Assembly (NCBI RefSeq): GCF_001194135.2
Contig: NC_068984.1
Coordinates: 122,033,209 to 122,090,776 of the forward strand
Reading direction: 5' to 3'
Length of the DNA: 57,568 nt
Source: Octopus bimaculoides
Lineage: Eukaryota
Positions 15,675 through 47,562 of this stretch are shown here, in pieces. The notes beneath the pieces are model-generated. The model worked only from the letters and a program-made list of their open reading frames with translations, was not told the DNA's origin and searched no databases. Made by a program: the position numbers and the translations under genes. Position 1 is the first letter of the stretch; every line of letters starts with the position of its first letter.

Positions 15675-16208
15675 CTTTTACTCTTTTACTTGTTTCAGTC
15701 ATTTGACTGTGACCATGCTGGAGCACCGCCTTTAGTCAAGCAAATCGACCCTGGGACTTATTCTTTGTAAGCCTAGTACTTATTCTATCAGTCTCTTTTT
15801 GCCGAATCGCTAGGTGACAGGGACATATACACACCAGCATCGGTTGTCAAGCAATGTTAGGGGGACAAACACAGACACACAAACATACACATACACATAC
15901 ATATATATANNNNNNNNNNNNNNNNNNNNNNNNNNNNNNNNNNNNNNNNNNNNNNNNNNNNNNNNNNNNNNNNNNNNNNNNNNNNNNNNNNNNNNNNNNN
16001 NNNNNNNNNNNNNNATATACATATATATATATATATATATACATATATACGACGGGCTTCTTTCAGTTTCCGTCTATCAAATCCACTCACAAGGCTTTGG
16101 TTGGCCCGAGGCTATAGTAGAAGACACTTCCCCAATGTGCCACGCAGTGGGACTGAACCCGGAACCATGTGGTTGGTAAGCAAGCTACTTACCACACAGC
16201 CACTCCTG
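15675..16208 (-). mobile_element. Young CORE-like SINE (tail A), gap in central microsatellite
   Basis: Near-identical to 29446-29849 on both sides of the N gap. Confidence 0.85.
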
Positions 16209-16804: not shown

Positions 16805-17665
16805 TTACCTTTTATCTTTTACTTGTTTCAGTCATTAGACTGCGGGCTATAATGGGGCACCACCTCTGAGAATTTTAGTCAAACAAATTGATCCTAATAC
16901 TTATTTTATCTTGAGCCTGGTACTTAATCTATTAGTTTCTTTTACTGAACCACAAAGTTACTGGGACATATACACACCAACACTACTTGTCAAGTGGTGG
17001 TGTGGTACAAACACGGACACAAAGACACCCATAAATAAATATATATGTATGCATATATATATATATATATANNNNNNNNNNNNNNNNNNNNNNNNNNNNN
17101 NNNNNNNNNNNNNNNNNNNNNNNNNNNNNNNNNNNNNNNNNNNNNNNNNNNNNNNNNNNNNNNNNNNNNNNNNNNNNNNNNNNNNNNNNNNNNNNNNNNN
17201 NNNNNNNNNNNNNNNNNNNNNNNNNNNNNNNNNNNNNNNNNNNNNNNNNNNNNNNNNNNNNNNNNNNNNNNNNNNNNNNNNNNNNNNNNNNNNNNNNNNN
17301 NNNNNNNNNNNNNNNNNNNNNNNNNNNNNNNNNNNNNNNNNNNNNNNNNNNNNNNNNNNNNNNNNNNNNNNNNNNNNNNNNNNNNNNNNNNNNNNNNNNN
17401 NNNNNNNNNNNNNNNNNNNNNNNNNNNNNNNNNNNNNNNNNNNNNNNNNNNNNNNNNNNNNNNNNNNNNNNNNNATATATATATGTATATATATATATAT
17501 GTATATATATATAAGATGGGCTTCTTTCAGTTTCTGTCTACCAAATCCTCTCATAAAGCTTTGATCAGTTCAAGGCTATAATAGAAGACACTTGCTCAAA
17601 GTACCATGCAATAGGACTGAACCCAGAACCATGTGATTGGGTAGCAAACTTCTTAGCACATAGCC
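16805..17665 (-). mobile_element. CORE-like SINE (tail A), gap in central microsatellite
   Basis: Tail on the left and head on the right of a large N gap. Confidence 0.75.
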
Positions 17666-17829
17666 AAGTTTGTGTCTACTATCTTCCTGATGATTATTTT
17701 ACAGTAGTGGAGTAAATGACTCCCAATTAGTGGTGGTGGCAGTGGTGGTGGCAGTGGTGGTGGCAGTGGTGGTGGTTGTGGTGATCATGGGTACTTCTTT
17801 CAAGTGCTACAAGAGGTATTTTTCACCTG

Positions 17830-18470
17830 TACAAGCGTAGCACCACAGCTGTTGCTAACAACTTGGCTTTTAGAGGTTATGGACTTTGGTTGTGTGGAAA
17901 ATTGAATGAGACATGCCAGAAGGATGGTTTAGATTACCCACTTATTTGTTTTGCATTGGTCAAGAGCAAAGCAAGTTGTCATTTGAAATAGTTGTTCTAA
18001 AACTGGTGAAGTTCTAAGTTTGCTAACTTTGAAGAACCAAAAGAATTTGGATGAGGCTGGTGGGGTGGCATACATTAAGATGTGATGTGTGTTGCTTTGA
18101 TTAGAAATAAGGATGATACTGGCTGGATAAAGGTTATGTTTGATAGTGAGAAAAAGGCCAAGAATGTTTAGAGAGTGTCAGTATGTAGGCCAGAAATATG
18201 GGTAAGGGAGGAAACTAACAGGTGCAAACATTAACAAATAATTTGGCCTTTGTGCTGGCATCATCAGTGTAGAAGTAGTGCAAAGGGAAACATTTGTATA
18301 CATTGTATACATTGAAGTTACAGAGGATGTTGAGTACAGGAGAGGAGTAAAGTGAAATGGATACCCTCAATACAAAAAGTGGGAGAGTCAAATAACAGTT
18401 AGTGGTTAGAAGAGTTCAGAGATCAGAAGAGATATGAGATGAAGAAAGACTTTGTGTCAGAGTAATTTGA
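17830..18470 (-). mobile_element. L2/CR1-clade LINE RT fragment (decayed)
   Basis: Minus pieces FTPLLYS..., FYTDDA (YADD-like) and LNILGL in RT order. Confidence 0.45.
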
Positions 18471-19283
18471 AGCTTTTATTGCTGAGTGGTGGAATGGAAT
18501 CAAAATATGCACAGACATCAAATTTTCAGAAATAAATTGAAATATAGAGATGAATTAGAGCAAAGATGAGATAGCAAAAGAATTTGTGAATTTTTTTATC
18601 TCACCATTGGATATGTAAATTTCAAGCAAGGTTCCCAAACTAGCCAAAACAACAAAGTTATGGCCTAATCATCAAAGAATTGATGGTTCGTATTCCTTCA
18701 ACAGTACTGTGCAGTGATTATGGCCCAGAGAATCTGATCTCATTAAATTATTCTAATTAGTTATAAATTAATACCATAAGTAGATAAGAGCACTAAATTA
18801 TCGACAGTGTTTCACTGGATTGTAATATTTTAAAAGTACAATAAAGATAAATGTTAGTTTTGCAGTTTCTTTACAATGACAGTGGATGGAATGTACAAGA
18901 ATAGTTTCAGAATGTTTGTAGAGTACATATAGAATATAGAATTCTACATAATGTTGTTAAAATGTTGTTTGAAAGGTTATAGGATTTTATTTTATGACTT
19001 AAAAGAAAATGATTGTACTCATGAGTTTAGCCAACTCTCACTGACTAGTCAGACTGATGCAGTTGCTGTTCTGCTTAAATTTCAGTAAGCTGATAATTGC
19101 AGAAAGGGAGAGAGAGTCAGGTGGATCAGGCAAACTCGACTGGAACTGGTATGTAACTAGGTTGCTTAGAAAAGAAGAGATCATTGTAGTTGAGACAGAA
19201 AAGACAGAGTAAGGATATGTAAGGGACGACCGTGCGAACTCAAAAAGGAGATATGGTGACGAATGGAAAAACAAAGGACTCCT

Positions 19284-20049
19284 TTTATTTAAACGTGTCA
19301 CACGGTCGAACACAAAATATATATTTCAATGGATGATATACATGATATGTTATGCGACGATAACATATGTGACCAGTAATGAAAGACCACAACCGTATAA
19401 GATGAATAACAGAGATATTTATTGTAGCGTTAAAGATGTATGTCTGTGTGAGAGTGTGAATGCGACATATAAGAACATAATCAAAGACAGGCCGTCATAC
19501 AAAGAAAAGTGTGTATGTGAGTGATACATGTGTGTGAGTGTTTACAGCAGATAGAAAGAGTCAGTAAATGACACGTGAGCAATTATACCAGTTCGTTAGT
19601 ACACTATAGGAAAAGTTCTGTATGTGAAAGTGAGGAGAGGCTGAGTGTGGCAGTGCTGATCACTAGTTGTGATGTTGTGGCNNNNNNNNNNNNNNNNNNN
19701 NNNNNNNNNNNNNNNNNNNNNNNNNNNNNNNNNNNNNNNNNNNNNNNNNNNNNNNNNNNNNNNNNNNNNNNNNNNNNNNNNNNNNNNNNNNNNNNNNNNN
19801 NNNNNNNNNNNNNNNNNNNNNNNNNNNNNNNNNNNNNNNNNNNNNNNNNNNNNNNNNNNNNNNNNNNNNNNNNNNNNNNNNNNNNNNNNNNNNNNNNNNN
19901 NNNNNNNNNNNNNNNNNNNNNNNNNNNNNNNNNNNNNNNNNNNNNNNNNNNNNNNNNNNNNNNNNNNNNNNNNNNNNNNNNNNNNNNNNNNNNNNNNNNN
20001 NNNNNNNNNNNNNNNNNNNNNNNNNNNNNNNNNNNNNNNNNNNNNNCAT
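19284..20049 (-). CDS. Candidate small gene: ATG at 20049, coding sequence hidden in the 365-N gap (19682-20046), 3' UTR with AATAAA at 19423-19418 and 19289-19284
   Basis: GCCATG Kozak context abuts the gap; upstream promoter elements; CpG retention 19.2-20.4 kb; poly(A) signals downstream. The product cannot be read. Confidence 0.5.
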
Positions 20050-20310
20050 GGCTGGACGAAGCTGCTGAAGTGGTCGCTGGCTGCTGCTGCTGTCGTGTGG
20101 TACACGGAACAGTTCTCAAAGAGAAACTGGACCGAGACCAATTTGTGGGGTATGAGTTGATCTATATATAGCGTTAAGAGGGCTCCAAGACGGTGATAGA
20201 ATTTTACTCTATCACGTGACCTTATTAGGGGCTGTGATTGGTCAGTTTGCGTTCTGGCGGGAACGGTTCGAAGAAGTTGCCGATTCGAATAATAATCAGT
20301 CACGTGATGA
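20050..20310 (-). promoter_or_regulatory. Pol II promoter and 5' UTR: TATA (20170-20161), E-box ATCACGTGAC (20211-20220), CCAAT (GACCAATCA, CCAAT at 20241-20237), E-box GTCACGTGAT (20299-20308)
   Basis: Motifs seen directly, in plausible order and spacing, in a CpG-rich patch of an otherwise CpG-depleted window. Confidence 0.7.
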
Positions 20311-20419
20311 CAAGTAATGGGTTCTCTACTACGCTCGCATTTATTTATATTTAAATGAGAAGAATGGCGATAGCAGTTTTGTATCTAATGGCGGTAGGTA
20401 GTTTCACTACAGATACAAC

Positions 20420-21490
20420 AGTACAACACTTCTGTGGGCCAGTGGTTGTAGAGTTGAATGGCCTTCTTTTGGATGTGGTTTAAACACTTGTGTGTGTCGG
20501 AGCAATATCATCTCTTATGTGGGAGCACCACTCCAACATGAGTACAACTTGAGTATTGCGGAAGATTGGTAATTGATCAGAACTGAAGTATTTTATGGCT
20601 TTGAAGGAGGAGCGATTAGTCACTGAGATGCAGCTTTTGCTATACTATGTATATAGGGCTGTCAAGAAGGTTGACCACAGATTGTATTGATTTTGATTGT
20701 TTGTTTTCTAAGACTATGGATGGTAGGGTATAAGATTGTTTCCTTGATATGTATAGTTGATTGTGCTTTTAATTGCCAAACATACTATATTGTCATGGCT
20801 CCATCTGAGGTTATTTCTAAGACCTTTGTTCACAGAGACTGTAGCGATTTGGTATGAAGAGTTGTGGTTGCATATGGATGATGAATGCATGAGGAAGGTA
20901 AAGGAAAAATGAAGATGGTGTCATATACATATGACTAAATGTTAATAGAAGTTGTAGCTAATCAGTTGTTAATGTAGAGCAGGGGTTCTCAACCCTTTTG
21001 TTTTTTATCTATGGACCCCCTTTTATTATTATTTTATTCTAAAAGACCCCTATAGCTATTTGATGTTTACAAGCTAGTTTTATAGAAACTTTTTTCAATA
21101 TTTCTATTTTGTTTCTCACACATTAACTTGTGTAGGTTGAACTATGTAAAATGTTAGAGAAAGAAACCTAGCTGTTTCTAGCAATATATACTAATACATA
21201 CATCTAAAGCAAATATTTTTCAGGGGCCCTTAAAATACTATGGTGGATCCCCAATTTACCATTTTGTTGCATGGACCCCACAAAATCTTATATGGACTCC
21301 AGTTGAGAATCACTGATGTAGAGGGTGAGAAAAAACCAAACCATGGGTCACACCAGACTTGTCAGAGTGTGGGTTGTGGAGAGACTCATCAGCACACAGT
21401 GCATGGTTCTATGTGACAGGAAGCTTTTCAGTCAAAGAGATGAGAAATGGTTGAAGTGTCAAACAGGTTAGCTAAGAGATTAGTAGTGTG
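20420..21490 (-). mobile_element. L2/CR1-clade LINE fragment interrupted by a hAT MITE
   Basis: Minus FLISL...HALCADES (YADD-like, ~21380) and TQV..MLEWCSHI...LNHIQKKAIQL (~20450-20560). Confidence 0.65.
20980..21315. mobile_element. hAT/Charlie-type MITE (336 bp)
   Basis: TIRs CAGGGGTTCTCAAC / GTTGAGAATCACTG; perfect 8-bp TSD ATGTAGAG (20972-20979, 21316-21323); homologous inverted copy at 40904-41254. Confidence 0.9.
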
Positions 21491-22709: not shown

Positions 22710-23082
22710 TCTTTTTTTTTACTCTTTTACTTGTTTCAGTCATTTGACTGCGGCCATGCTGGCGCACCACCTTTAGTCGAGCAAATCAACCCCAGGACTT
22801 ATTCTTTGTAAGCCTAGTATTTATTCTATCAGTCTCTTTTGCCGAACCGCTAAGTTACAGGGACGCACACACACCACCATCGGTTGTCAAGCGATGTTGG
22901 GGGGACAAACACAGACACACAAACATATACACACTCATACATATATACACATATATACGGCAGACTTCTTTCAGTTTCCGCCTACCAAATCCACTCACAA
23001 GGCTTTTGTCAGCCCGAGGCTATAGTAGAAGACACTTGCCCAAGATGCCACGCAGTGGGACTGAACCCGGAGCCATGTGGTT
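22710..23082 (-). mobile_element. Young CORE-like SINE (tail A), 5'-clipped
   Basis: Near-identical to 29446-29849; the head is replaced by another repeat at ~23085. Confidence 0.85.
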
Positions 23083-23084
23083 AG

Positions 23085-23265
23085 CATCTCGCTCAAATGT
23101 CTTTACATGTGCCACCGGCACGAGTGCCAGGAAGGCGACGCTGGGCACAGGTTCCATCACGATTTCGCTTTTGTTTGCCCCAACAGGTCTTCACAAGCCA
23201 AGTTTTGTGTCCTGCATAGGAGCCAGTCCAGCGGCACTGGCAACGATCTCACTCGAATGTCTGAT
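23085..23265 (-). mobile_element. 5' part of the RTE-tailed SINE-like repeat
   Basis: Reverse complement of motifs at 7090-7170 (GACATTCGAGCGAGATC..., GCCAGTGCC...GGACTGGCTCC). Confidence 0.6.
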
Positions 23266-25265: not shown

Positions 25266-25570
25266 TCATGTTTTGAACTTGAGAAAAGTCTCACATAGTT
25301 TTACTGTTCCACTTACAGATTGTATTTGTACTGAGTGAGATCTAGCTGGATGATTTCTTTTTCTGGAAACCCTAATTTACCAAGATAGTCACTTAGGCAT
25401 TTTACTCACAAAACCAAATGCACCGATTATAACTGGTATGAATGTAAATGTATAATCTGGATATAGAAGCTGAAGGTTTTGAAACAATTGCATGTAGTCA
25501 TCTTCTTTCTCTGTGTTTTGAAGAGATATCCACTTCAGCCAGGCAGCTGACCTCTCTGATATGACATACA
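25266..25570 (-). mobile_element. 3' end of a restriction-like-endonuclease LINE (R4/NeSL/CRE-type)
   Basis: Minus EKEDDYMQLFQNLQLLYPDYTFTFIPVIIGAFG...KLGF...QIQSVSGTVKLCETFLKF* resembles the RLE C-terminus (EK..KY..L...P.(V/I)IGA.G). Confidence 0.7.
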
Positions 25571-25949
25571 TTTTCTTGTCTGTCTTACAACAATATCCGG
25601 CCTGTTATGTATATATCTACATACATACTTACGTATGTATCTATGCGTGTGTATATTATATGTATATATGTATGTATATGTACATATGTATGTATATATG
25701 CATGTACATATGTATGTATGAATGTGTATATGTATATAAACATGATGACATGCATATGGATGAATGTGTGTAGGATTATATAATGTATCTAGAATAGTAG
25801 TGCTTGCATATCTCTTTTTTACAGATTACTGTTACTGTTTATCTCATGGAGTGAACTTGGAATCAGTCGAGTGTTATAATCTCAGCTGCCAGTACACTTC
25901 CTCTACTTCCTAAAGTCTTCTGCCAAGCCTCCTAATGGTCACACATACT

Positions 25950-27672: not shown

Positions 27673-28168
27673 ACAGTTAGTCCTATTGCTGGTCTATTAT
27701 GGGTAGGTTCAACCTACTATCAACTCTTATTTACCATTCAGCAACTTTTCAGTATGATGAGTCAACAGTGGTGGCATATGTTGTCATTCAACTGCTAGAA
27801 AGAGCGACCAAATCTCACTCAAACCACAGTTCATTGTTTTAAAAAGGAGTCATTTGATAATATTGTCCACGTGGCACTATATCTGTGTAACAGGAGGTAT
27901 CAATATGAGGCGAAATGAAATAATCACCTGTTTAACATATGAATGATGTGCATAGTTGCTAGATTGAGACAAATGGAAAGTTGGATGAATGAATGAGAGA
28001 AGTCATTGTTTTTGATTCATCATTTGCATTGTTAAAAATTTTTATCAGACACAACCATCCAAAGAGGAACTATATAGAGTAACACAAGAAGGGTAATTTT
28101 TTATGTTATTAGATTGTGGCCATGCTGGAGCACTATCTTAAAGAGTTTTATAGTCAAAGAATATATAT

Positions 28169-28619
28169 AGGCGTAGGAGTAGCTGTATGGTAAATAGCTT
28201 GCTTACAAACCACATGGTTCAGGGTTCAGTCCCACTGCGTGGCACCTTGGGCAAGTGTCTTCTACTATAGCCTCGGGCCGACCAAAGCCTTGTGAGTGGA
28301 TTTGGTAGACGGAAACTGAAAGAANNNNNNNNNNTTGTGAGTGGATTTGGTAGACGGAAACTGAAAGAAGCCCGTCATATATATATATGTATGTATGTGT
28401 GTGTATATGTTTGTGTGTCTGTTTGTCTCCCCAACATCGCTTGACAACCAATGCTGGTGTGTTTAAGTCCCCATAACTTAGTGGTTCAGCAAAAGGGACT
28501 GATAGAATAAGTACTAGGCTTACAAAGAATAAGTCCTGGGGTTGATTTGCTCAAATAAAGGCGGTGCTCCAGCATGGCCACATTCAAATGACTGAAACAA
28601 GTAAAAGAGTAAAAGAGTA
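28169..28619 (+). mobile_element. Young CORE-like SINE (tail A)
   Basis: Complete head, CORE, microsatellite and tail ending (AAAAGAGT)n; TA-rich flanks. Confidence 0.9.
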
Positions 28620-29445: not shown

Positions 29446-29849
29446 TACTCTTTACTCTTTACTCTTTTACTTGTTTCAGTCATTTGACTGCGGCCATGCT
29501 GGAGCACCACCTTTAGCCGAGAAAATCGCCCCCGGGACTTATTCTTTGTAAGCCTAGTACTTATTCTATCGGTCTCTTTTTGCCGAACCGCTAAGTTACG
29601 GGGACCTAAACACACCAGCATCGGTTGTCAAGCGATGGTGGGGGGACAAACACAGACACACAAACACACATACATATATATATACATATATACGACGGGC
29701 TTCTTTCAGTTTCCGTCTACCAAATACACTCACAAGGCTTTGGTCGGCCCGAGGCTATAGTAGAAGACACTCACCCAAGGTGCCACACAGTGGGACTGAA
29801 CCCGGAACCATGTGGTTGGTAAGCAAGCTACTTACCACACAGCCACTCC
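29446..29849 (-). mobile_element. Full-length young CORE-like tRNA SINE (tail A), ~404 bp
   Basis: Minus GGAGTGGCTGTGTGGTAAG A-box, GGTTCAGTCCC B-box, ACCTTGGGT-type CORE, central (TA/TG)n, tail TGACTGAAACAAGT(AAAAGAGT)n; CpGs intact. Confidence 0.9.
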
Positions 29850-32656: not shown

Positions 32657-33417
32657 TCCTGGGTATGACAGTGAACTGCATTCAGTGGCAAGGATCCAGT
32701 TCTGGAATTGTAGGGAATGTGGAGTCACCTCTTAATTATCATTACTCCCAGATCCTTTCTGACCCAGAAAAATGGTACCTGTCAAGGTCCCATCAAGGAT
32801 AGAGGAAGCTCCCATTATTTTTGACAAAGCTGTGAAGAAGGAAGTTCTTCTAAGAAAAAGGGACCCTGATGTAAAGCTTTCAGTCAAAATCATACCCGTC
32901 ATCTTCCAATGTTTGTCACAGGAGCCTATACCATGGCAACTGAGAAAATGGCAAAAATCTTAAACAAGCTTTTGTCACTTAAATCCAATGATGTACAGAC
33001 TTGATGTACAGCTATCATCTGACAAGATGAGGCAACCATCATGTATGTATATATGTATGCATGTAAGTACATATATACATATGTAATGTATATATGTATG
33101 CTTGTATGTACATATATGAATACGTATTTATGTATGTATGTATGTATGTATGTATGTATTTATAAATGTATTTATGTGTATGCAAATGGAGTAAACAGAG
33201 AACCAAAAGTATTTTTTTCTGTTGTGTCAGTAGTAAAAAATCCCAGAATAGAATGAAACCTTGTGATTTGAAAGTCTTTTAGTTTTGCAAAATGACTAAA
33301 TATTGTGACTGCATTTTTGTGTGTTATGGAAATAGTATTGGCAGAGAGCTGGAGAATGGAATGATCACCTCTCACTGGAATCACATGTTTTTTAATCTTT
33401 CATATGTCATTTTTCTC

Positions 33418-33504
<87 letters not shown>

Positions 33505-34283
33505 TTGTGTATACGTATGTATATATATGTGCATGTGATTGTTTATATGTATGTATGATTTTATGTGCATTAAGTTAAAAATGATGATGATGATGATAAT
33601 GATGACAGCAATGTTAATGATGATGATAATGATGACTATAAGAATGATGATACCAATGATATGCTGACAATGATGTTGAGGATGATGATGATGACAACAA
33701 TGACAACAAGGATGATGATGATGATGATGGGGGTGGTAGTTTTGGTGGCTGTGATGATGATGATGATGATGAATACATCCTGACCATGGTTGACAATCAC
33801 AAATGCAGTATCTTGGCTGTCTTACCAGTCTCTGAAGATCTTTGGTACAACCCCTTCCTTCGAAGCAAACTTCTGAAACAAATATCCAGTTGTGTCCACC
33901 CCTTTTCCCTTTGTCTATCATCATACTTTTATGCCTTTTCCCCTCACACTTCCTAGGTCTCTGACATATTGTTCTGTCACCCTAGGTCATGTATGTAATG
34001 TATGTATGTGTATGTAAATATGTGTGTGTGTGTGTGTGTGTGTATGTACGTACGTATGTGTGCATCCCTCGTACGTATGCGTGCATCCCTCATACATATG
34101 TGTGCATCTTCAATATCCCTCTGGATCTTTCCATTGCCCCCAACGGGGCAGTACTGCTCACTTTGGGAACCACTGGTGTAAAATGTGAGGTTGTGAATTG
34201 TCTTTGGTCTTGTCAAGGACATGACATCTCTCTAATGCTGGTCCAACAAAAACAAATGAATAAAACTTTTCAAAATAAACTGC

Positions 34284-34692
34284 AGGAGTGGCTGTGTGGT
34301 AAGTAACTTACCCACCAATCACATGGTTCCAAGTTCAGTATCACTGCATGGCACCTTGGGCAAGTATCTACTACTATAGCTTCAGGCCAACCAAAGCCTT
34401 GGGTGTGGATTTGGCAGACAGAAACTGAAAGAAGCCCGTCGTATATATGTGTGTGTGAGTGTGTGTGTGTGTGTGTGTGTTTGTGTGTCTGTGTTTGTCT
34501 CCTTACCATCGCCTGACAACTGATGTCAGTGTGTTTATGTCCCTGTAACTTTGCAGCTCAGCAAAAGAAACCCAATAGAATAAGTACTAGGCTTACAAAG
34601 AATAAGTCCTGGGGTCGATTTGTTCGACTAAAGGCAGTGCTCCAGCATGGCCGCAGTCAAGATGACTGAAACAAATAAAAGAATAAAAGAAT
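34284..34692 (+). mobile_element. Full-length CORE-like SINE (tail A)
   Basis: AGGAGTGGCTGTGTGGTAAG ... TGACTGAAACAAATAAAAGAATAAAAG. Confidence 0.9.
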
Positions 34693-37555: not shown

Positions 37556-37776
37556 NNNNNNNNNNNNNNNNNNNNNNNNNNNNNNNNNNNNNNNNNNNNN
37601 NNNNNNNNNNNNNNNNNNNNNNNNNNNNNNNNNNNNNNNNNNNNNNNNNNNNNNNNNNNNNNNNNNNNNNNNNNNNNNNNNNNNNNNNNNNNNNNNNNNN
37701 NNNNNNNNNNNNNNNNNNNNNNNATATATATATATATATGTGTGTGTACATACACACTCACAACATAAATATATAT

Positions 37777-37814
<38 letters not shown>

Positions 37815-38119
37815 TAAATATTGAGATATGCTATTGACTATCCAATAATTTATTTATATTACAATATTACATTAAATACTATGAATATAATATAACATAA
37901 CATAATATTATATAACGTAAGGTGAGAGGTATTGGTATCCAGAAGATCCAAGATGGTAGGTAAGGTTATGGGAAGATCGTAGTTAGACTCTTGGTTCGAT
38001 AATAATACGAGTGAGGAGTCTCATGTGGGTCTTGTGTGAGTATGTATATGTTAAATAAAATGAGACAACAAAGCCAAGGCTGTGTGGAATTTATAGGACA
38101 TTTATAAAGAGAAAGAGAG

Positions 38120-38165
38120 TCTTACGGCTGTTTCTGGGATATTAGGGATATCCCTTCATCAGAGA
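38120..38165 (-). ncRNA. Minimal type I hammerhead ribozyme candidate (Penelope-like)
   Basis: UCU-CUGAUGA-A-GGGAUAU-CCCUA-AUAUCCC-A-GAA-AC-AGCC-GU-A-AGA: full core, 7-bp stem II, GUA triplet, 3-bp stem I. Confidence 0.5.
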
Positions 38166-38773
38166 TGATATGAGAGAGTTAACTAGAGGGAAATAGTAGA
38201 GTTCAATACAAGGAGTTATTTTGGAAAAGGATGGATATGTATGTATGTATGTATGTGTGTGTGTGTATGTAAGTATGTATGTATAGGTGTGTGTGTGTGT
38301 AGGCTTGGTAGTAAAGCAATAGAACTCGATATATGAGTATATACTTTTAATGGTGATTAAAATATATATAGAGTAAAACTGTTTAAAGTTCCACATGAAC
38401 CAAACATATATAAATATACCATATGTGTGTGTGTGTGTGTGTGTGTGTACTGTAAGTCTGAGGTAAATGTCTTAAGTACTAGTGAACTCTGTAGGGGTGA
38501 AGGGAATGTTCAATTTTCAGGCTTCTACTAGACACTATGTAATTAAGGCAGCTGAAAATGAATATTCCCTAAGAAATCATGATACTCTGATTGTTTGTTG
38601 TGAGTGTCTGCATGATCCATCATATCAGATGCCAACAGTTGCTGCTAAGCATTCTTCACCGTGCACTTGAAAAGGCACACCACAGTCCCTGATTATCATT
38701 AAGAACCTAATACTATTTCTGATTCATTCTCACATTGGGATTTTTCATGATTTAGCTTTGAATCTTATAGTAA

Positions 38774-38992
38774 CCCTTTTGATACCAACCCGCCTGAGAC
38801 TACCCTTTGTTCTACGAAGTAAACTCTGTTTTACAGTGATCTAAATTAAAACTAACCCTCAAAATTTTATGTTAATTTATACTCCAAACACTAGATAAAT
38901 AATGACAAAAATTATTTTACTAAATTCTTCCTTGTTTTCAAGATTAATTGAAACAAAAGCACTATTTCAACAGAAATATGGCAACAAAAGGG
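38774..38992. mobile_element. TTAA-targeting MITE, family 2
   Basis: gtaa|CCCTTTT...AAAAGGG|ttaa; internal sequence unrelated to family 1. Confidence 0.65.
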
Positions 38993-39939
38993 TTAATTCT
39001 GTTTCTGAAATTGAGGTTTTTGTTTGTGGGATGGTGGTTAGGTTCATGTTTTCTTCTGCTATTTTTTCTGAAATTGAACTCTCTCTCTCTCTCCCTTTCC
39101 CTCTTTCTATGTTCCAATGTATTCTACCACAATTTTTTTCAAAGCTATTTTGTTTGAAAGCTATCAATCCAGAATCTGAAATTTCCTTTAAATTTCCTGA
39201 TATTTTGGTCAGCTTTTTTTATTTGCAATGCTTGTATTATTTATGTATTTATTTGTGTATTTATTGTGGTAATAGCTTACACAAGAAACTCATGTAAGCG
39301 TATTGCAAGCTGGAAGGTATATATTACAGTAGAATCCACTATTGAATATCCTTTACAAACTGACATCAGGTTATATTAAGTCTGTAAAAATTCTGGGAAG
39401 GAAAAAAAAAAATCACATGAATAAAATAAAGAAAAAAATATAATGACTTAAAAAGAATTTCGATAAATAAATAAATAAATAAATAAATAGATAGATAAAT
39501 AAAAACTAAAAACTACTAAAGAGAAAATATTTCCTCTCAGAAATAAATAAAGTACTTCTAAGACTGTAAGGAGTGTTTTGAAGATAATTAAAGACTAAAT
39601 ATTCTACAAGGATTCACCAAAGACAGTGAGGTTTACCACACCTTCCATTGGAATGTTTTCTGTTTTGTTGGGATTTTTTTTTCTGTTTATTTTTTCTTTC
39701 AAACATTTGAAACCTTGAAATTGCTGAGTCATGTGACTTTTGCTACACTTATTTACTTACTGACAGGAATTTTAAGGAAAATGTTTTGGGTCTAACACAT
39801 AATAAATGCTCTACAGACATTCAAGGCTTTAAACTCAAACAGACATTCTTCAAATGACTCTTAGTACTGGGCCCAGCTCCCCTGCCCCACCAACTCCACC
39901 ATTCCAGAAATAAGATAAAGCCCCCTATTGCCATCAACA

Positions 39940-40094
39940 CCACCAATAACAACAACAACAACAACAATACTATCATCATCATCATCACCTACCAAGACAG
40001 CAATCATCACCACCACTAACACTAGGCCTCCGTCATCATCATCAACAGCATTGTCACTACCACTGCCACTATCATCATCTTCATCATCATCATC

Positions 40095-40126
<32 letters not shown>

Positions 40127-40640
40127 CATCACCATCATCATCACCATCATCATCAATATCATTGCCACCATCACTGTCCCTATTATCAATATCATCTCTA
40201 TCGTCAGCTTCCTCATCATCATCTACTTCTCTTCTCTCATTCTCTTATCTGTCTCTATTATCCTTCTCTCATTTGCCCTTATACCTTTCTCTCCCTCTCT
40301 CTCTCTTACACACACACATGCACACAAACTCTCTCTCTCTTTCTCTCTCTCAACGATGCAGTCTTTCTCTCGGTCTTTTACTCTCTGTCTAATGAATTAT
40401 TACTGTTATTCACTCTCTCTCTATGTTTGCTTCTTTCTCTATCTCCGTGCATTGCAGTTTCTTTCTTTTGCTATGTTGCTGTCTCTTTCCCTTATTATAT
40501 TTCTCTCCCTTCATCTAGATGTCTGTTGCCTTTTCTTTGTGAGTCTCTCCCCTACTCTTTCTCTCTCTCTCTCTCTTTCTCTGTTTCACACCTCTCTGTA
40601 TATGTTATTCTTCTCTCTGTCTATCTCCTTTTTTCTCTCT
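39940..40640. repeat. Low-complexity (CAT/CAC)n and (CT)n tract
   Basis: Direct inspection. Confidence 0.9.
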
Positions 40641-40903
40641 TAATTCCTAATTTTAAGTTGCTTATCATAATATAAGACAAATATCACTCTGATCAGGACA
40701 CCGGTCTAGCACAGATAATATTCCCTGGTACTATGCTATCTTTTCTCCCTGGACTTCTAAATAAACCAAAGTACTGTACAACATAATGTCCTCTCCAGAA
40801 ATGCAGCCAAACACATACAAACTGCCGACTCAAACTCCCAACAATAAGAGCAGCTTACTAAATGCCTTATGCATTTGGTCTTCTCCCATCTATTACCTGA
40901 AAC

Positions 40904-41254
40904 CAGTGGTTCTCAATTGGGATCCATATGGCTCATGAGAGTCCATTAAAGATTTTGTGGTGTCCATACAATAAAATAGTAAATTGGGGATCCACAATAG
41001 CATTTTAAGGGTCCCCGAAACAATTTTGCTTTAGATGTATGTATTGGTATGTATTGCAAGAAATAGAAAGGTGTCTTTCTTTAACATTTTACATAATTCA
41101 ACCTACGTAAATTAAAGTTTGAAAAACCAAATAGGAATTTTGAAAGAAGTTTCTATAAAACTAGTTTTTAAGCATCAAATGGTTATGGGGGTTCACTAGG
41201 ATAAAATAGTAATCAAAGGGGTCCATAGATAAAAAAAATGGTTGAGAACCCCTA
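40904..41254. mobile_element. hAT/Charlie-type MITE, same family as 20980-21315
   Basis: CAGTGGTTCTCAA ... TTGAGAACCCCTA; TSD CCTGAAAC / CCTTAAAC (7/8). Confidence 0.85.
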
Positions 41255-41524
41255 CCTTAAACCATGAAAAATATTTTAATGACACAGCTCTTGCTTCTGG
41301 AGTGGTCAGAAGAATAAAGAATCATTATCAAGGATAACCAAAGGTCACCTAAATGCTACTTGTTAAAATATCCTGGTCCTTATCTGATATCAAAATTCAG
41401 AAGCCTTCAACATAATATTTTGGTTTTATATTTCTCAACAGGACATAAACATCATAATGAGCTCTCCCGCAAAATATTTTACATGATATATAATCTGACA
41501 ATTTTAAACAGTAGGTGCAAGTGT

Positions 41525-41754
41525 TATTTCTTTACTGCCCACAAGGGGCTACACACTGAGGGGACAAACAAGGACAGACAAACAGATCAAGTCGATTATA
41601 TCGACCCCAGTGCGTAACTGGTACTTATTTAATCGACCCCAAAAGGATGAAAGGCAAAGTCGACCTCGGCGGAATTTGAACTCAGAACGTAGCGGCAGAC
41701 GAAATACCGCTAAGCATTTCGCCCAGCGTGCTATCATTTCTGCCAGCTCACCGC
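41525..41754 (-). mobile_element. Young Meta-domain-like SINE
   Basis: CpG-intact head GCGGTGAGCTGGCAG, GAGTTCAAATTCC B-box and GTCGACTTTGCCTTTCATCC...GGGGTCGAT domain. Confidence 0.9.
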
Positions 41755-41756
41755 AA

Positions 41757-41890
41757 GTGTGGTCTGGGATTCAATCCCACTGCACAGCACCTTAAGCAAA
41801 TGGCTTCTACTATTCAGCCCTGTGATGGTCAAAACCTTGTGAGTGGATTATTTAGTAGACAGATACTTGAAGAAGCCTGTTGCATATATG
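41757..41890 (+). mobile_element. CORE-like SINE fragment
   Basis: GGATTCAATCCC B-box and CACCTTAAGCAAATGGCTTCTAC. Confidence 0.6.
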
Positions 41891-42024
41891 TATATATACC
41901 AAGCTTTGAAAAAGTCCTGTTACACTCATTACAACGCTCTCGACAAAGGACACGATGATAGTTTTGATGCAGTTAGACATGTTTTTATTGTTTTAACATA
42001 TAAATATGTGTTTAGATATTAATA

Positions 42025-44185
42025 TTAATCACTGTGGCTGCCTTTGGTGGTGGGCATGCACTCCAGGCTTGACCTGAACGCTGCACACATGTTGCAGATG
42101 AAGTCTTTCCTCATGTTGGCCCACACACATTGACGGAGTGATTTGGATTTCCTGCAGTGTTCCTGATCTGATTGATCACAGTAATGTGTCCAGCAATAGT
42201 CAGCTAGTTTACTGTCATTCCAGAAACCTTGGTACCATTTCTCCTTGGCACTAATGTCCTGTTGAAATCTTTCACCATGTTCATCAGATGCTGCTCCAAA
42301 GTTATCTGCAAAGAAATTCAGATGGGAGTCCAAGAAGTGAACTTTCAGTGACATGTGACAACCCATTGCTGAGTAACATTTCAGAAGATTCTTGATGTCA
42401 TCCTTTGGCCTTCTTGTTTCCCAAGAAATTCTCACAGATCCAATTGAAAGCATTCCAGGCAGGCAGTTCCAGTTCATCTAGTGTTGTCTTGAAGTTGACA
42501 TCTTTGAGTATTTCTGTAATTTGGGGTCCGATGAAGATACCCTCTTTCAACTTCACCTGTGTGATTTTCGGAAACTTTTCTACAATATACTCAAACCCTC
42601 TGGCATTTCTCTTTCTTAGTGTCTTTACAAACTGTTTCATCAGTCCAAGCTTTATATGCAAAGGAAGCAATAGGACATTTCATGGATCTACAAGTGGTGT
42701 ATTCTTGACGCTAGACAGTCCTGGCTGGTATGATGTTCTTGTCTGCCAGTTTGATCCTGAGTAATGTTTTGCAGTTGTCCAACTACCCAATAGACACAAG
42801 AAACAACAGTATTTTGTGAATCCTGACTACATTCCCATTAACATACCAATGACTTGTAAATCTCCACCTATTTTCCATGAGTATCTTTCATAGGCAATAG
42901 CATGAAATAAGAGCTTCATATTCTCATATGATTCATGAAGATGAATGGAGAGTGCAATAAGAATGGAGGGCTTCAACTTACCATTACGGAGAAGTACAGC
43001 TTTTAAACTTCGTTTTGAAGAGTCAATAAACAAACACCACTCTGCAGGATCATGATTTTGTAATAAACATTTGAAAGGTCCATTGATGCTACTGCAAAAG
43101 TAAAGTGAGCCTTCAACAGAAGAACATGCTTCTAGAACCATATTTCTCTACTAAAAATAAGTTATATGAACACCGTGCTCTAACAGATACTTTTCCTTTA
43201 GTCTTGTGCCAACAGTTCTGCTTTATCTTTTGAGAGGGACAGGTCTCTGACAAGGTCATTTAGTTCAGCTTGGAAAAATTTCTGAGGTTCAAAGGTATCG
43301 TCATCAGCCACGTAATCTTCCTCAGCAGCACTATCATGACAGTCAGCACCATCAGCTGATGTTTCAATACCATCATCTGGTGGAACTAGAATTGGCAGAC
43401 TTCCATTGTAAGGCACAGGTCTCATTGCAGAAACCAAATTGGGATACACAATTTTGTATTTATTCTTCATAGAAAATCTTGTGACATTTATTTTGCAAAA
43501 ATAACAGTCATTAAAATGGTCACTTGGCTCCTCCATATCATCGGACTGGCAAAAGGTATAGACTTCTTATTGAACCAGTCATGTAAGCCATTTGAGCCAG
43601 CTGAACAGATAAAATGTGGTGTCAATAACCTGTCCTGATCTCTAAGAGGAAAGTCAAAGTATAGCTTATAAATCTTCTTGATCTCTGGTATTATCGTAAG
43701 TTTTTGAGCTTTCACAATAAATTGTCCACAGACATAACAAAACACATCAGGACGATTTCTAAACTGTCTTGACATTGTTAACACTGTAAAACAAGTAAGA
43801 AAATAGATACAAATGGTTATACTTGTATTGAATTTGAGATGATGAAATATTTCATTAAACCAATTACGACTGGAAAATTTGAGATGCTGAAACACCTATT
43901 TCATCAGACAAAACTTGATTTAAAATGAAATATTGCATCTGAACTATGCAGCAATAAATAATGTAGTTTATTTTAAAGGTATGTTTCCATGACGTAAATG
44001 AAATACATGCATACACGTCATTAACTGGAATTTCTATATAATGCATGAACTAAAACCATAACACTTTCTTACCTTGGAAACTGTACGTGATGTCAAAAAA
44101 CTAATGGTATATTTGAAATCAGCATTAAAAACTACATTGGGCACACCTTGACATATGCTTGATCAAAAATACTTGCTGACCTGTG
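42025..44185 (-). mobile_element. Chapaev3-like (CMC superfamily) DNA transposon; one terminus at 44185, the other not found
   Basis: Minus-strand terminus CACAGGTCAGCAAG flanked by TTA (44186-44188); subterminal CTGATTTCAAAT...CATCACGTACAGTTTCC motif; transposase motifs listed in the next feature. Family name is from recalled motifs. Confidence 0.75.
42110..43775 (-). pseudogene. Disrupted Chapaev3-like DDE transposase (~550 codons; several stops and frameshifts)
   Basis: MSRQFRNRPDVFCYVCG; EPSDHFNDCYFC...YPNLVSAMRPVP; LFIDSSKRSLKAVLL; GGDLQV; TKYCCFLC; LPLHIKLGLMKQFVK; GIFIGPQI; MSLKVHFLDSHL; SDEHGERFQQDI; LADYCW. Confidence 0.9.
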
Positions 44186-44730
44186 TTATAGGACTGCTTG
44201 ATCAGGGCTGACCTAGGGTTAATGAAACGCCATCGTCACAGTAATTATCATCATCATCATCATCATATGAGCCACTATGCAGTTGTTTATCTTGCAAGAA
44301 ATATTTGCAAATGTCCCACAAACCATACCCTATTGTCTTAAAAATTGAAGGACATGTTAGTTCATGTACTTCTAGATACATTATCTCTGAATAAATGTTA
44401 GGATGGACACAGCCAAAATTTTTTTGCTTTTGATCAAAGGTCTGTTCAAATGAGGCTGAATAACTACAACAGTTTCCAACTGAGACATATATCAGGGGAA
44501 TAGCTAGGAAGTGGGATGCAGTCCAACCCCAGGTAACACTTTTGCAGGAGTGGCACTTTTGGGTCTACTGTATAAGCCGGTATTTTTTTTGTAGAAACCC
44601 AAGGGTTACGCCAAATGGCACAACAAGTAGGGGAGGAAAAAACAAACTCAAGAGTTACGATGAGTGGCACGCACACACACACACACACACACAAGCCAAA
44701 CCACTGATACATATTTTGGAGAACTGAAAT

Positions 44731-44839
44731 ATTGTCCACAGACATAACAAAACACATCAAAACGATTTCTACACTGTCTTGGCATTGTTAACACTGTAAA
44801 ACAAGTAAGAAAATAGATACAATTTATTTTCTTACTTGT
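44731..44839 (-). repeat. 92-bp copy of the transposase start region (43721-43812) ending in a 15-bp foldback
   Basis: 4 mismatches versus 43721-43812; inverted repeat ACAAGTAAGAAAATA (44801-44815) / TATTTTCTTACTTGT (44825-44839). Confidence 0.9.
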
Positions 44840-44859
44840 AATTTTAGCCAGCAATTTTG

Positions 44860-45026
44860 GTGAGGTGGGGATAAGTCGATTACATGGACCCCAGTACTCA
44901 ACTGGTACTTATTTTATTGACCTCAAAAGGAGGAAAAAGGCAAAGTTGACCTCAGAACATAAAGATGGATGAAATGCCACTAAGCATTTTGCCCAGTGTG
45001 CTAATGATTCTGCCAGCTTGCTGCCC
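44860..45026 (-). mobile_element. Meta-domain-like SINE
   Basis: AGGCAAAGTTGACC and GATTCTGCCAG motifs (reverse complement of consensus). Confidence 0.7.
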
Positions 45027-45232
45027 TGGAGAGTTGAAATATTGCTGAGAGAATATTCATTCAATTCAGTTCTTGTAATTGATAAGTAATTATTTTGCTT
45101 GACTCCTGAAGAATAAAGGCAAAGATTTGAACTCCTAAAGTAAAGGGATGTAACAAGTACTCAGCTGACTCTACCATCCAAACACTTGTTGCAGTCTTTG
45201 TACTGCAGCCATACTGAGGCATCATCTTAAAG

Positions 45233-45660
45233 CAACGTTTCTCAACTGGAGTTCCCCAGAACCCTAGGGCTTCCATGAGAAAGAGTGAGATAAGCTAAGG
45301 ATAATTTCCTGACCGTAATGTTACTATACATGCACAACATAATTATTGGTTATTGTAATATAGACATCATCCTGTTTAACCTATTATGTTATCAAAAAAA
45401 TATAACAACTATTGGGGATATATTTAATGATGTCTGTAATTTATGGACACCCTATATATATATCTAAAGGATGTGTTATAACACTATTCCATATATACAC
45501 AAACAGCCATACCAACAATCCAACATACCTCCATCCACATGAACTACAATGAAAAAAATATGAGGAAAATATGGTATGTAATTTTTTTTGTGCAGGGGTT
45601 CCTTGAGACATGTAATTTATTTTAAGGGTTATGCAAGGGTAAAAAGGTTGAGAAACACTG
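45233..45660. mobile_element. hAT-type MITE, third family
   Basis: CAACGTTTCTCAAC / GTTGAGAAACACTG; TSD TCTTAAAG / CCTTAAGG (6/8). Confidence 0.7.
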
Positions 45661-45824
45661 CCTTAAGGGGTTTAGTCAAACAAATGAACCCCAGTACTTG
45701 TGTGTTTTTAAAGCTTGTGTGTTCCATATTTTTATGACAGAGCACCAAAATATGTGGTGCATTGCCGTACTTGAGAAAACCCATTCATCACAACAGAATT
45801 GAGATCCTAAAACCAAATGCCACA

Positions 45825-46060
45825 TAAAAGCATTGGTGTGGGTGCTGGTACCATGTAAAAAGCACTGGTGATGGTGCCACCAAGGACATTCTGTAAAGTA
45901 GTTGGCATTAGGAATGGCATCCAGCCTGAGAAACCTTGCCAAAACAGACAATTGGAGTCTGGTGCAGCTCTCTGGCTGCTAGCCCTTGTCAAACCATCCA
46001 ACCCATGCCAGCATGGAAAGTAGTTGTTGAATGATGAGGATGACGATGACGATGATGATG
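45825..46060 (+). mobile_element. RTE-tailed SINE-like repeat (3' part)
   Basis: GTTGGCATTAGGAATGGCATCCAGC...CCAACCCATGCCAGCATGGAAAG(GAT)n. Confidence 0.7.
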
Positions 46061-46061
46061 A

Positions 46062-46431
46062 TACTTATTCTATTGGTCTCTTTTGTCAAGCTGCTAAGTT
46101 ATGAGACATAAAGAAACCGACACTGGTTGTCAAGCAACTTTGGTAGTGGTGGTGGTGGTGGTGGTGGTGGTGGTAGTAGTAATTGGAAGGACAAAGACAC
46201 ACACACACACACACATGCACGCATGCATGCACACACAGACACATACACATACATATACGCACACTAACACATATACTACAGGCTTCCACAGTTTCCAATC
46301 ATCTAAATTCACTCAAAAGGCATTGTTTGGCTTGGGGCCATATTTAGAAGACACATAACCAATGTGCCACACAGTGGGATTGAACCTGAAACCACATGGT
46401 TGCAAAACAAGCTTCTTAACCACACAGCCAT
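46062..46431 (-). mobile_element. CORE-like SINE with truncated tail A
   Basis: Head at the right, (CA)n and (GTG)n in the middle, TACTTATTCTATTGGTCTC at the left. Confidence 0.7.
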
Positions 46432-46809
46432 AATTCTAACATATATCATCGACCCTGAAAAAACGAAAAATCAAAGCCATACTCAGCTGGATTTGAACTC
46501 AGAATGTAAAGAGGTGTAACTAAATACCAAAAGGTATTTTGCTTGTCAGTCTATGGGTATTTAGTTGGTGAGAGACTCAGACAATAATGAAATAATAAAT
46601 GCTCCATTTCTTTGTCTCTTTCCTCTTCCCTACCATCAACGATTCATCCCCATGAGCTCCTCTGCCAACATCCACCAACACACTAAGTACTATATCATAT
46701 TCTCTAAAACAGTTTTCATCTGTTCACCAGATCGTATAACAAACAACATAGTTGAAATATCGCTGACAACTTCACCCTATATGTGGTNNNNNNNNNNNNN
46801 NNNNNNNNN

Positions 46810-47445: not shown

Positions 47446-47476
<31 letters not shown>

Positions 47477-47515: not shown

Positions 47516-47562
47516 CAATTAATAGCTGGAGAGAGATAGTAATTAATATATGTTCTAGGGAA

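What the first reader, a model, noticed from the sequence alone, without database searches (positions are those of the whole stretch)
19200..20330. A complete promoter and GCC-ATG run straight into a 365-N gap: a small gene appears to be missing from the assembly
Seen on the minus strand: two E-boxes that are exact reverse complements (GTCACGTGAT 20299-20308, ATCACGTGAC 20211-20220), an NF-Y-type GACCAATCA, TATATATAG, ~90 nt of UTR and a GCCATG whose ATG (20049-20047) is the last readable codon before the gap. Beyond the gap lie ~400 nt of UTR-like sequence with AATAAA at 19423 and 19289. CpGs are retained across 19.2-20.4 kb, unlike the rest of the window. Unlike most gaps here, this one has no flanking microsatellite. 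Inference: the gap hides a CDS nearly identical to paralogues elsewhere, which collapsed during assembly. Histones fit the size: H4 needs 309 nt after the ATG, leaving ~56 nt, and the first post-gap bases GCCACAA resemble the end of a histone stem-loop; H2A/H2B need roughly 366-384 nt. TCACGTGA is also the established USF/MITF-TFE(CLEAR)/SREBP-type E-box, so a small lysosomal or stress gene is an alternative. The product is not determinable from this sequence.
Basis: partly seen in the sequence, partly recalled or inferred. Interest (0 to 1): 0.72.

Follow-up and report, generated by a model that had tools for sequence, protein, structure and literature searches.

The report
Probable gene promoter cut by gap
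An ordinary-looking animal gene promoter and start codon in an octopus scaffold run into an unsequenced gap, so a probably small gene (or its first exon) is missing from this assembly; what it encodes cannot be told here, and the histone guess is not supported.

Summary
The two TCACGTGA boxes are the only ones in 57.5 kb (0.33 expected) and lie 88 nt apart. They sit with a CCAAT box and a TATA box at the upstream end of the one clear CpG-retaining patch (19227-20392; CpG o/e about 1.0 against 0.26 for the window). The ATG at 20049-20047 is the first ATG after the TATA box. It has a purine at -3 and an in-frame stop 17 codons upstream. The CpG patch continues past the gap and ends just after the second AATAAA, so both flanks probably belong to one unit of about 0.9 kb.

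I could not find what the gap hides. No readable flank peptide, and no unique ORF peptide of 30 or 42 residues upward (by zone) within about 10 kb, matches any protein in the 5.8-billion collection. A positive control did find an Octopus sinensis protein. It showed that window 37-57.5 kb is collinear with O. sinensis CM016862.1 at about 90% identity, but the fetched DNA stops about 17 kb short of the gap.

The histone idea has no support: no purine-rich downstream element, no stem-loop match, no histone genes nearby. Interest is low: a likely real but ordinary promoter beside an assembly gap.

The parts
19227..20392 (-). CpG-retaining patch, probably unmethylated in the germline. It spans the promoter, the gap and the post-gap sequence.
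   Evidence: CpG positions; CpG o/e 0.96-1.2 against 0.26 window-wide.
20299..20308 (.). Distal palindromic E-box with TCACGTGA core, about -168 to -159 from the inferred start site.
   Evidence: It sits in a 21-nt direct repeat shared with the proximal box (D2).
20235..20243 (-). CCAAT box (GACCAATCA), NF-Y type, about -101 to -97.
   Evidence: the only copy of the 9-mer in the window.
20211..20220 (.). Proximal palindromic E-box with TCACGTGA core, about -80 to -71.
20162..20171 (.). TATA box CTATATATAG. It is palindromic, so it does not set the direction of transcription by itself.
20050..20140 (-). Inferred 5' UTR of about 91 nt. The start site is placed about 30 nt after the TATA box and is not mapped. 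It contains (CAG)4 and no upstream ATG.
   Evidence: start-site position is inference.
20047..20049 (-). Putative start codon in GCCATG context. It is the last readable triplet before the gap.
19682..20046 (.). Assembly gap of 365 N (estimated length). It hides everything after codon 1.
19265..19681 (-). Post-gap sequence, either 3' UTR (preferred) or the start of intron 1. All three frames close within 5, 25 and 27 codons.
   Evidence: no protein matches these frames.
19572..19577 (.). Third CACGTG E-box core, 105 nt beyond the gap.
19418..19423 (-). First AATAAA, with a GU-rich stretch 28-40 nt downstream.
   Evidence: 89th percentile of the downstream U/GU score.
19284..19289 (-). Second AATAAA, followed by TTTGTTTTT. 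The CpG patch ends about 55 nt beyond it.

Best explanation
This is an RNA polymerase II promoter of an octopus gene on the minus strand. The promoter sits at the upstream end of a patch of about 1.2 kb that has kept its CpGs.

The inferred mechanism is as follows.
- Two palindromic class-B E-boxes (TCACGTGA) would be bound by bHLH-zipper factors of the USF, MiT/TFE or Myc/Max type.
- An NF-Y-type CCAAT box lies between them.
- A TATA box places the start of transcription near 20140.
- After a 5' UTR of about 91 nt with no upstream ATG, translation would start at ATG 20049-20047.
- The assembly gap removes everything from codon 2 onward.

The CpG patch resumes after the gap and stops just past the second of two AATAAA signals. 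My preferred reading is therefore a compact, probably intronless unit of about 0.75-0.9 kb. Its coding sequence would be at most about 120-150 codons if the gap estimate is right, and it would lie wholly or almost wholly in the gap.

Shown: the motifs, the CpG retention, the ATG context and the closed frames after the gap. Inferred: factor binding, the start site, use of the ATG, use of the poly(A) signals, and the existence and size of the coding sequence. The product is unknown.

The confidence of 0.5 is for a real promoter plus a real start codon of a protein-coding gene whose coding sequence starts in the gap. The narrower single-exon small-gene version gets about 0.3.
For: - Motifs are at the stated places.
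- TCACGTGA is expected 0.33 times per window; the only two copies lie 88 nt apart.
- CpG density is 34.8 per kb against 8.2 per kb, and o/e is about 1.0 against 0.26. The patch runs from 19227 to 20392, that is from just upstream of the distal E-box to just past the second AATAAA.
- ATG 20049 is the first ATG after the TATA box, with G at -3 and an in-frame stop upstream.
- The CpG patch extends toward lower coordinates from the activator sites and not toward higher ones. This fixes the direction even though the TATA box and E-boxes are palindromic.
- GC content rises toward both gap edges (62% and 54% against about 37% for the window), as expected for hidden coding or GC-rich sequence.
- The flanks carry no TE hallmarks, no tandem repeats and no other copy in the window.
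- No readable translation beside the gap matches any known protein. A positive control with a TE ORF found Octopus sinensis proteins. So if there is a coding sequence, it lies in the gap.
- TCACGTGA is the published CLEAR-type site of MiT/TFE factors (PMC6355916).
Against: - There is no transcript, CAGE or cross-species evidence for this spot.
- The start site is placed only by the TATA rule. The single perfect Inr match (TCATACC, 20155-20149) is too close to the TATA box.
- The AATAAA signals are not statistically unusual.
- No protein in the collection could be tied to this locus, so the gene may be unannotated or may not exist.
- An ATG at a contig end can be coincidence.
- A weaker TATA-like run (20340-20354) with a 42-codon ORF on the + strand (20355-20483) leaves a divergent or opposite-direction reading open.
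- Octopus TEs are also CpG-dense on average (PMC9476566).
Confidence: 0.5

Rival explanations
1. First exon of a multi-exon gene. The promoter and ATG are real, but exon 1 ends inside the gap, possibly right after the ATG as in some calmodulin and ribosomal-protein genes. The post-gap DNA is then intron 1 and the AATAAA hexamers are chance. Only part of one exon is missing.
For: - AATAAA is frequent on this strand (63 copies), and the two sites have only moderately good downstream elements.
- All three post-gap frames close within 27 codons, and none matches a protein.
- CpG-rich promoter patches commonly extend into the first intron (general knowledge).
Against: - The CpG patch ends within about 55 nt of the second AATAAA.
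- No minus-strand ORF of 30 or more codons between 9 and 19 kb matches any protein in the collection, which includes O. sinensis proteins.
- Nothing exon-like is visible in the 19 kb downstream.
- Exons shorter than 30 codons, or exons beyond the window, are not excluded.
Confidence: 0.22
2. A promoter-like patch that makes no protein. It could be the promoter of a non-coding transcript, an enhancer, or a single-copy fragment of a repeat that carries its own promoter. The ATG at the contig end is then coincidence, and the gap hides a microsatellite, a trinucleotide tract or a SINE like the other gaps.
For: - Of the other 10 gaps in the window, 8 abut microsatellites and one lies inside a SINE.
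- (CAG)4 and a CTG-rich imperfect repeat lie at the pre-gap edge (D3).
- The post-gap edge (CCACAACATCACAAC) resembles the CAY-type trinucleotide tracts that flank the gaps at 46.8 and 47.1 kb.
- Octopus TEs are CpG-dense and mostly unmethylated (PMC9476566).
- No annotated protein maps here.
Against: - No target-site duplication, terminal repeat or second copy was found in 57 kb or in 36.8 kb of O. sinensis DNA.
- Two E-boxes, a CCAAT box, a TATA box, an ATG-free leader and a Kozak ATG all in the right order and spacing is more than a random CpG-rich fragment usually offers.
- TRF finds no repeat touching either edge.
Confidence: 0.2
3. A replication-dependent histone gene (H4, H2A or H2B). 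Its coding sequence collapsed in assembly because of near-identical paralogues, and the post-gap GCCACAA is the 3' end of the histone stem-loop.
For: - The size fits. H4 needs 309 nt after the ATG against 365 estimated.
- TATA and CCAAT boxes are usual in histone promoters.
- Poly(A) signals downstream of mollusc histone genes are on record (Mytilus H1 orphon genes, cited in PMC6210712).
- A contig break at the ATG is what conserved paralogous coding sequences could cause.
Against: - No RF00032 match in the readable DNA at E <= 10.
- No purine run of 4 or more in the 60 nt after the gap, where the U7-binding downstream element should be.
- No histone coding sequence elsewhere in 57.5 kb, so no cluster.
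- Only GCCAC matches the stem-loop consensus.
- A leader of about 91 nt is long for a histone mRNA (general knowledge).
Confidence: 0.04
4. A chance cluster of motifs with no function.
For: - Each motif is short.
- E-boxes contain CpG, so they are likelier inside any CpG-rich patch.
- The TATA box lies in AT-rich DNA full of TA runs (18 TATATATAG matches in the window on both strands).
Against: - The CpG patch itself needs an explanation. Both flanks rank among the top four 400-nt windows of the window for CpG o/e.
- The only two TCACGTGA copies in 57.5 kb lie 88 nt apart.
Confidence: 0.04

Closest known systems
TATA- and CCAAT-containing RNA polymerase II promoters with NF-Y and USF-type E-box partners
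   Same: CCAAT about 100 nt and TATA about 30 nt upstream of the inferred start site; CACGTG E-boxes flank the CCAAT box; the patch retains its CpGs.
   Different: The start site, factor binding and activity are all untested. GC content is only 38-45%, so the patch is not a CpG island by the vertebrate GC criterion.
CLEAR-element promoters (MiT/TFE targets: lysosomal, autophagy and v-ATPase genes)
   Same: Two perfect TCACGTGA cores, each with T at -4 in both half-sites, within 170 nt of the inferred start site (PMC6355916 for the motif).
   Different: The same sequence also binds USF, Myc/Max and SREBP-type factors. The gene product is unknown, so membership in the lysosomal network cannot be claimed.
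Replication-dependent histone genes
   Same: A small, possibly intronless unit with TATA and CCAAT boxes; the size would fit H4.
   Different: No stem-loop match, no downstream purine-rich element, no neighbouring histone genes, and a long leader.
Assembly gaps at first exons or repeats in short-read scaffolds
   Same: Estimated-length N run; GC content rises toward both edges; the other gaps of the same scaffold sit in microsatellites or a SINE.
   Different: Here neither edge touches a recognisable repeat, and the break falls exactly after a start codon.

Membership tests
Replication-dependent histone gene | Histone-fold coding sequence | not testable with these tools
   It would lie wholly in the gap. 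No gap-free copy could be fetched.
Replication-dependent histone gene | Conserved 3' stem-loop (Rfam RF00032) shortly after the stop codon | tested here: inconclusive
   No match in the readable DNA at E <= 10. The element could lie in the gap. Only GCCAC at the post-gap edge agrees with the consensus.
Replication-dependent histone gene | Purine-rich histone downstream element about 10-20 nt after the stem-loop | tested here: not met
   No purine run of 4 or more in the first 60 nt after the gap; the first is AGAA at +62.
Replication-dependent histone gene | Location in a cluster with other histone genes | tested here: not met
   tblastn with H2A, H2B, H3 and H4 against the window gave nothing better than E = 3.7.
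CLEAR-network (MiT/TFE target) promoter | One or more TCACGTGA elements close to the transcription start | tested here: met
   Two perfect copies at about -75 and -163 from the inferred start site. The start site itself is inferred.
CLEAR-network (MiT/TFE target) promoter | Bound and activated by a MiT/TFE factor; product acts in the lysosome or autophagy | not testable with these tools
   There are no binding or expression data, and the product is hidden in the gap.
RNA polymerase II core promoter | TATA box 25-35 nt upstream of a mapped start site with an initiator | tested here: inconclusive
   The TATA box is present. No start site is mapped. The only perfect Inr match (20155-20149) is 17 nt from the TATA box, which is too close.
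CpG island (vertebrate criteria) | Length over 200 nt, CpG o/e over 0.6, GC over 50% | tested here: not met
   Length and o/e are met (about 1.0 over about 800 readable nt). GC is 38-45%, below the criterion. It is a CpG-retaining patch in an AT-rich genome, not a textbook island.
Transposable element or solo LTR carrying a promoter | Terminal repeats, target-site duplication, other copies | tested here: not met
   None in 18300-21100. No other copy in the window or in 36.8 kb of O. sinensis DNA. Genome-wide copy number is not testable here.

The most novel reading that the evidence does not exclude
The gap hides a lineage-restricted small protein gene of about 120 residues or fewer. It would be one of several near-identical cephalopod paralogues that short-read assembly collapses, driven by a CLEAR/USF-type promoter and missing from current annotations.
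Probability: 0.1. Interest if true: 0.35.

Novelty: new member of a known kind. Interest (0 to 1): 0.18.

Why it matters
If the reading is right, one small octopus gene, or its first exon, is absent from this assembly and possibly from its annotation. That matters for the completeness of gene catalogues built on short-read scaffolds. It is also a reminder that gaps can start exactly at coding sequence. It does not bear on any open biological question. The promoter architecture is conventional, and the question is settled by looking at a long-read assembly or a transcriptome.

Tried and rejected
1. Rfam on the whole window at gathering thresholds, and on 18500-20900 at E <= 10. Only chance-level hits; no histone stem-loop and no IRE. 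No tRNAs.

2. Exact look-up of flank ORFs 19038-19313(-) and 6073-6573(+) in public assemblies. Neither is on record.

3. Protein search with a 338-residue concatenate of translations beside the gap: one pre-gap frame, two post-gap frames, the 91-residue ORF downstream at 19038-19313 and the opposite-strand peptides. No hit at E <= 10.

4. Exact-match DNA scans with the 5' UTR/ATG junction, the post-gap edge and the CCAAT/E-box block. No hits in JGI metagenomes or in prokaryote genomes, as expected for animal DNA.

5. Positive control and walk.
- The TE ORF 42025-42477(-) hit Octopus sinensis LOC118762843.
- Its locus L001 (CM016862.1:17667740-17704512) is collinear with window 57.5 to about 37 kb at a weighted 89.7% identity.
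- L001 ends about 17 kb of window sequence before the gap.
- The second-best hit (ENA contig, L002) shares only the TE and is not orthologous.

6. Last protein search, with a 4721-residue concatenate of unique ORFs from 9-19 kb and 20.4-30.5 kb. The aim was to find any annotated gene within 10 kb of the gap as a handle. No hit at E <= 0.01.

7. TE reading. No terminal repeats, target-site duplication or tandem repeats, and no other copy of the flanks.

8. Heat-shock elements, the ER-stress element (CCAAT-N9-CCACG), metal-response elements, BRE and DPE were checked by eye against the sequence. None fits.

9. Pfam on eight window ORFs gave nothing significant.

10. Bacterial promoter/terminator scan. 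Not applicable to a eukaryote.

Full report
**The observation**

The window is animal DNA, rich in microsatellites and SINE copies, with 11 N gaps.
- ATCACGTGAC at 20308-20299
- GACCAATCA at 20243-20235
- GTCACGTGAT at 20220-20211
- TATATATAG at 20170-20162
- GCCATG at 20052-20047

The 365-N gap follows at 20046-19682. Beyond it lie AATAAA at 19423-19418 and at 19289-19284.

**Is it more than chance?**

- TCACGTGA is expected 0.33 times in this window. It occurs twice, both copies here, 88 nt apart.
- CpG dinucleotides are dense from 19227 to 20392: 35 in 1006 readable nt, or 34.8 per kb, against 8.2 per kb in the rest of the window.
- CpG o/e is 0.96 for 19200-19681 and 1.13 for 20047-20400. 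The window as a whole has 0.26, and the median 400-nt window has 0.20.
- ATG 20049 is the first ATG after the TATA box, 122 nt downstream of its start. It has G at -3, and an in-frame TGA lies 17 codons upstream.

- AATAAA occurs 63 times on this strand. The downstream U/GU-rich scores of the two sites rank only at the 78th-89th percentile of all AATAAA sites in the window.
- An ATG at a gap edge is not rare when 11 gaps give 44 oriented edges.
- The TATA box (CTATATATAG) and both E-boxes are palindromes. Direction therefore rests on the order of the elements and on the CpG patch, which extends from the activator sites toward lower coordinates only.

**Continuity and frame across the gap**

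The letters cannot be joined directly, and the end sequences do not overlap. By contrast, the ends of the 10-N gap at 28325-28334 repeat the same 35 nt on both sides.

Both flanks of the present gap rank among the top four of all 400-nt windows for CpG o/e. They also share the same strand skew, with the minus strand poor in G. Two unrelated contig ends would rarely both look like this, so I take the flanks as parts of one unit.

Frame cannot be tested, because the gap length is an estimate. The three post-gap frames close after 5, 25 and 27 codons.

**What the gap might hide**

- GC content rises toward both edges: 62% in 20047-20096 and 54% in 19632-19681, against about 37% overall.
- Neither edge touches a tandem repeat. 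The flanks have no second copy in the window.
- (CAG)4 and a CTG-rich imperfect repeat lie 5-50 nt from the pre-gap edge.
- The post-gap edge (CCACAACATCACAAC) resembles the CAY-type trinucleotide tracts that flank two other gaps.
- Of the other ten gaps, eight abut microsatellites and one lies inside a high-copy SINE. The base rate therefore says the hidden piece is repetitive in some sense.

It could be a coding sequence shared with paralogues, a trinucleotide tract (coding or not), or an inserted repeat. The data do not decide.

**Attempts to identify the hidden sequence**

- Rfam gives nothing at gathering thresholds in the window and only chance-level hits around the gap.
- A protein search with translations beside the gap, on both strands and including the 85-codon open frame that runs through the promoter, found nothing at E <= 10 among 5.8 billion proteins.
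- That negative result is meaningful because a positive control worked. A degenerate transposon ORF at 42025-42477 hit Octopus sinensis LOC118762843 at 83% identity.
- The genomic locus of that protein, L001 = GCA_006345805.1 CM016862.1:17667740-17704512, has no N. It is collinear with window 57568 down to about 37765 in reverse orientation. Anchors are 84-93% identical, 89.7% weighted.
- So the window comes from an octopus close to, but distinct from, O. sinensis.
- L001 stops about 17 kb of window sequence short of the gap, and only one gene is called in it.
- A final search used 4721 residues of unique ORF translations from 9-19 kb and 20.4-30.5 kb. It found no annotated or called protein at E <= 0.01. 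I therefore had no handle to fetch the orthologue of the gap.
- The same result means that no downstream coding exon of 30 or more codons within 10 kb matches any protein on record.
- Exact-match DNA scans of metagenome and prokaryote collections were empty, as expected.

**Best explanation (confidence 0.5)**

This is a conventional RNA polymerase II promoter.
- bHLH-zipper factors would bind the two TCACGTGA boxes. This sequence is the CLEAR-type site of MiT/TFE factors (PMC6355916), and it also fits USF, Myc/Max and SREBP-type proteins.
- NF-Y would bind the CCAAT box.
- TBP would bind the TATA box.
- Transcription would start near 20140 and translation at ATG 20049.

The CpG patch continues after the gap and ends about 55 nt past the second AATAAA. 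I therefore prefer a compact unit of about 0.75-0.9 kb whose coding sequence, at most about 120-150 codons on the estimated gap length, lies in the gap. I give this narrower version about 0.3.

[quoted passage not shown] That paper counts 80.7 million CpGs over both strands. With my own rough figures for genome size and GC content, this gives a genome-wide CpG o/e near 0.5. The window's 0.26 is then low, and the patch stands out as a region that escaped CpG loss. This step is inference.

**Rivals**

- First exon of a multi-exon gene, with the post-gap DNA as intron 1 (0.22). The AATAAA signals are weak evidence. Against it stand the coincidence of the CpG boundary with the second AATAAA and the lack of any matching downstream exon.
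- A non-coding or repeat-borne promoter-like patch with a coincidental ATG (0.20). It is favoured by the base rate of repeat-caused gaps and by the lack of any annotated protein. Against it stand the ordered motif set and the absence of TE hallmarks.
- A histone gene (0.04). See the next section.
- A pure chance cluster (0.04).

**The histone hypothesis**

The arithmetic is right: H4 needs 309 nt after the ATG. But three defining features fail or cannot be shown.
- No stem-loop match in readable DNA. The element could hide in the gap.
- No purine-rich downstream element. There is no purine run of 4 or more in the 60 nt after the gap.
- No other histone gene in 57.5 kb.

Poly(A) signals do not exclude a mollusc histone gene (PMC6210712, citing Mytilus H1 orphon genes). 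They do not support one either.

**Novelty and interest**

This is a probable unannotated or unassembled member of a very well known kind of feature. The finding is sound as an observation, but it is mainly an assembly issue. The decisive test is simple: read CM016862.1 at about 17.721-17.730 Mb in O. sinensis, or any long-read assembly or transcriptome of the source species.

Noticed in passing
window 37765-57568 and L001 6315-35906: This part of the window is collinear, in reverse orientation, with Octopus sinensis CM016862.1:17667740-17704512. Unique DNA is about 90% identical, and the O. sinensis interval is about 1.5 times longer. The source is therefore an octopus close to, but not the same as, O. 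sinensis.
   Followed up: yes
window 42025-43895 (-): Five consecutive ORF pieces of a degenerate transposon-like gene, broken by frameshifts. The best relative is O. sinensis LOC118762843, and many unnamed relatives occur in arthropod and metagenome data. Pfam finds no domain.
   Followed up: partly
window 28290-28369 (gap 28325-28334): The last 35 nt before this 10-N gap are identical to the first 35 nt after it, and the gap lies inside a high-copy SINE. The two contig ends overlap, so the gap is probably spurious and the 35 nt are duplicated by scaffolding.
   Followed up: partly
window 16027-16206, 17491-17670, 22935-23114, 28125-28534, 29670-29849, 34282-34690, 48746-48925 and others: A SINE family (core GGGCTTCTTTCAGTTTCCGTCTACCAAATCCACTCACAAGGCTTTGG) with at least 12 copies in the window at 70-96% identity. 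It is also frequent in the O. sinensis locus.
   Followed up: partly
window 11600-11733: A second short CpG-rich stretch (10 CpG in the 333 readable nt of the 400-nt bin from 11401, o/e 1.3) directly abuts another gap (11734-11930). Its nature is unknown.
   Followed up: no
window 11320-11384: A near-perfect hairpin palindrome (ATTCAAGACACTGCCTGGAATTGAACTTGCAAGTTCAATTCTAGGCAGTGCCTTGAAT) sits between an (ATT)n run and an (AAT)n run. It looks like a MITE.
   Followed up: no
window 20355-20483 (+): A 42-codon ATG ORF on the opposite strand starts just upstream of the distal E-box and next to a TATA-like run (20340-20354). Its N-terminus (MRRMAIAVLYLMAVGSF) looks like a signal peptide, and a GTAGGT follows codon 13. 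A divergent transcript from the same control region is possible.
   Followed up: no
window 17700-21150: A 3.4-kb stretch in which the minus strand is strongly C-rich and G-poor (GC skew +0.25 to +0.49 on the + strand). It extends well beyond the CpG patch on both sides. Unexplained.
   Followed up: no
window 20199-20219 and 20287-20307: The two E-boxes lie in a 21-nt direct repeat (GAATTTTACTCTATCACGTGA / GAATAATAATCAGTCACGTGA, 16 of 21 identical). The pair may have arisen by duplication of one module.
   Followed up: no
window 33400-33924, 39922-40392, 46716-47640: Long degenerate trinucleotide tracts (CAY/GGT type) give His-, Ser- or Gly-rich pseudo-ORFs. Two of the assembly gaps lie inside them.
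   Followed up: no
window 25392-25604 (-), 50607-50813 (+), 56439-56971 (+): ORF fragments that look by eye like C-terminal parts of non-LTR retrotransposon reverse transcriptases. Pfam gave nothing for 56469-56843.
   Followed up: no
window 3475-3708: A tandem repeat of a 26-nt unit, 7 or more copies at 62-86% identity.
   Followed up: no
L002 19745-19963: On the unrelated ENA contig ctg44389 (sample ERZ25067561), which shares only the transposon with the window, a 72-residue called ORF carries an HSP70 Pfam hit.
   Followed up: no
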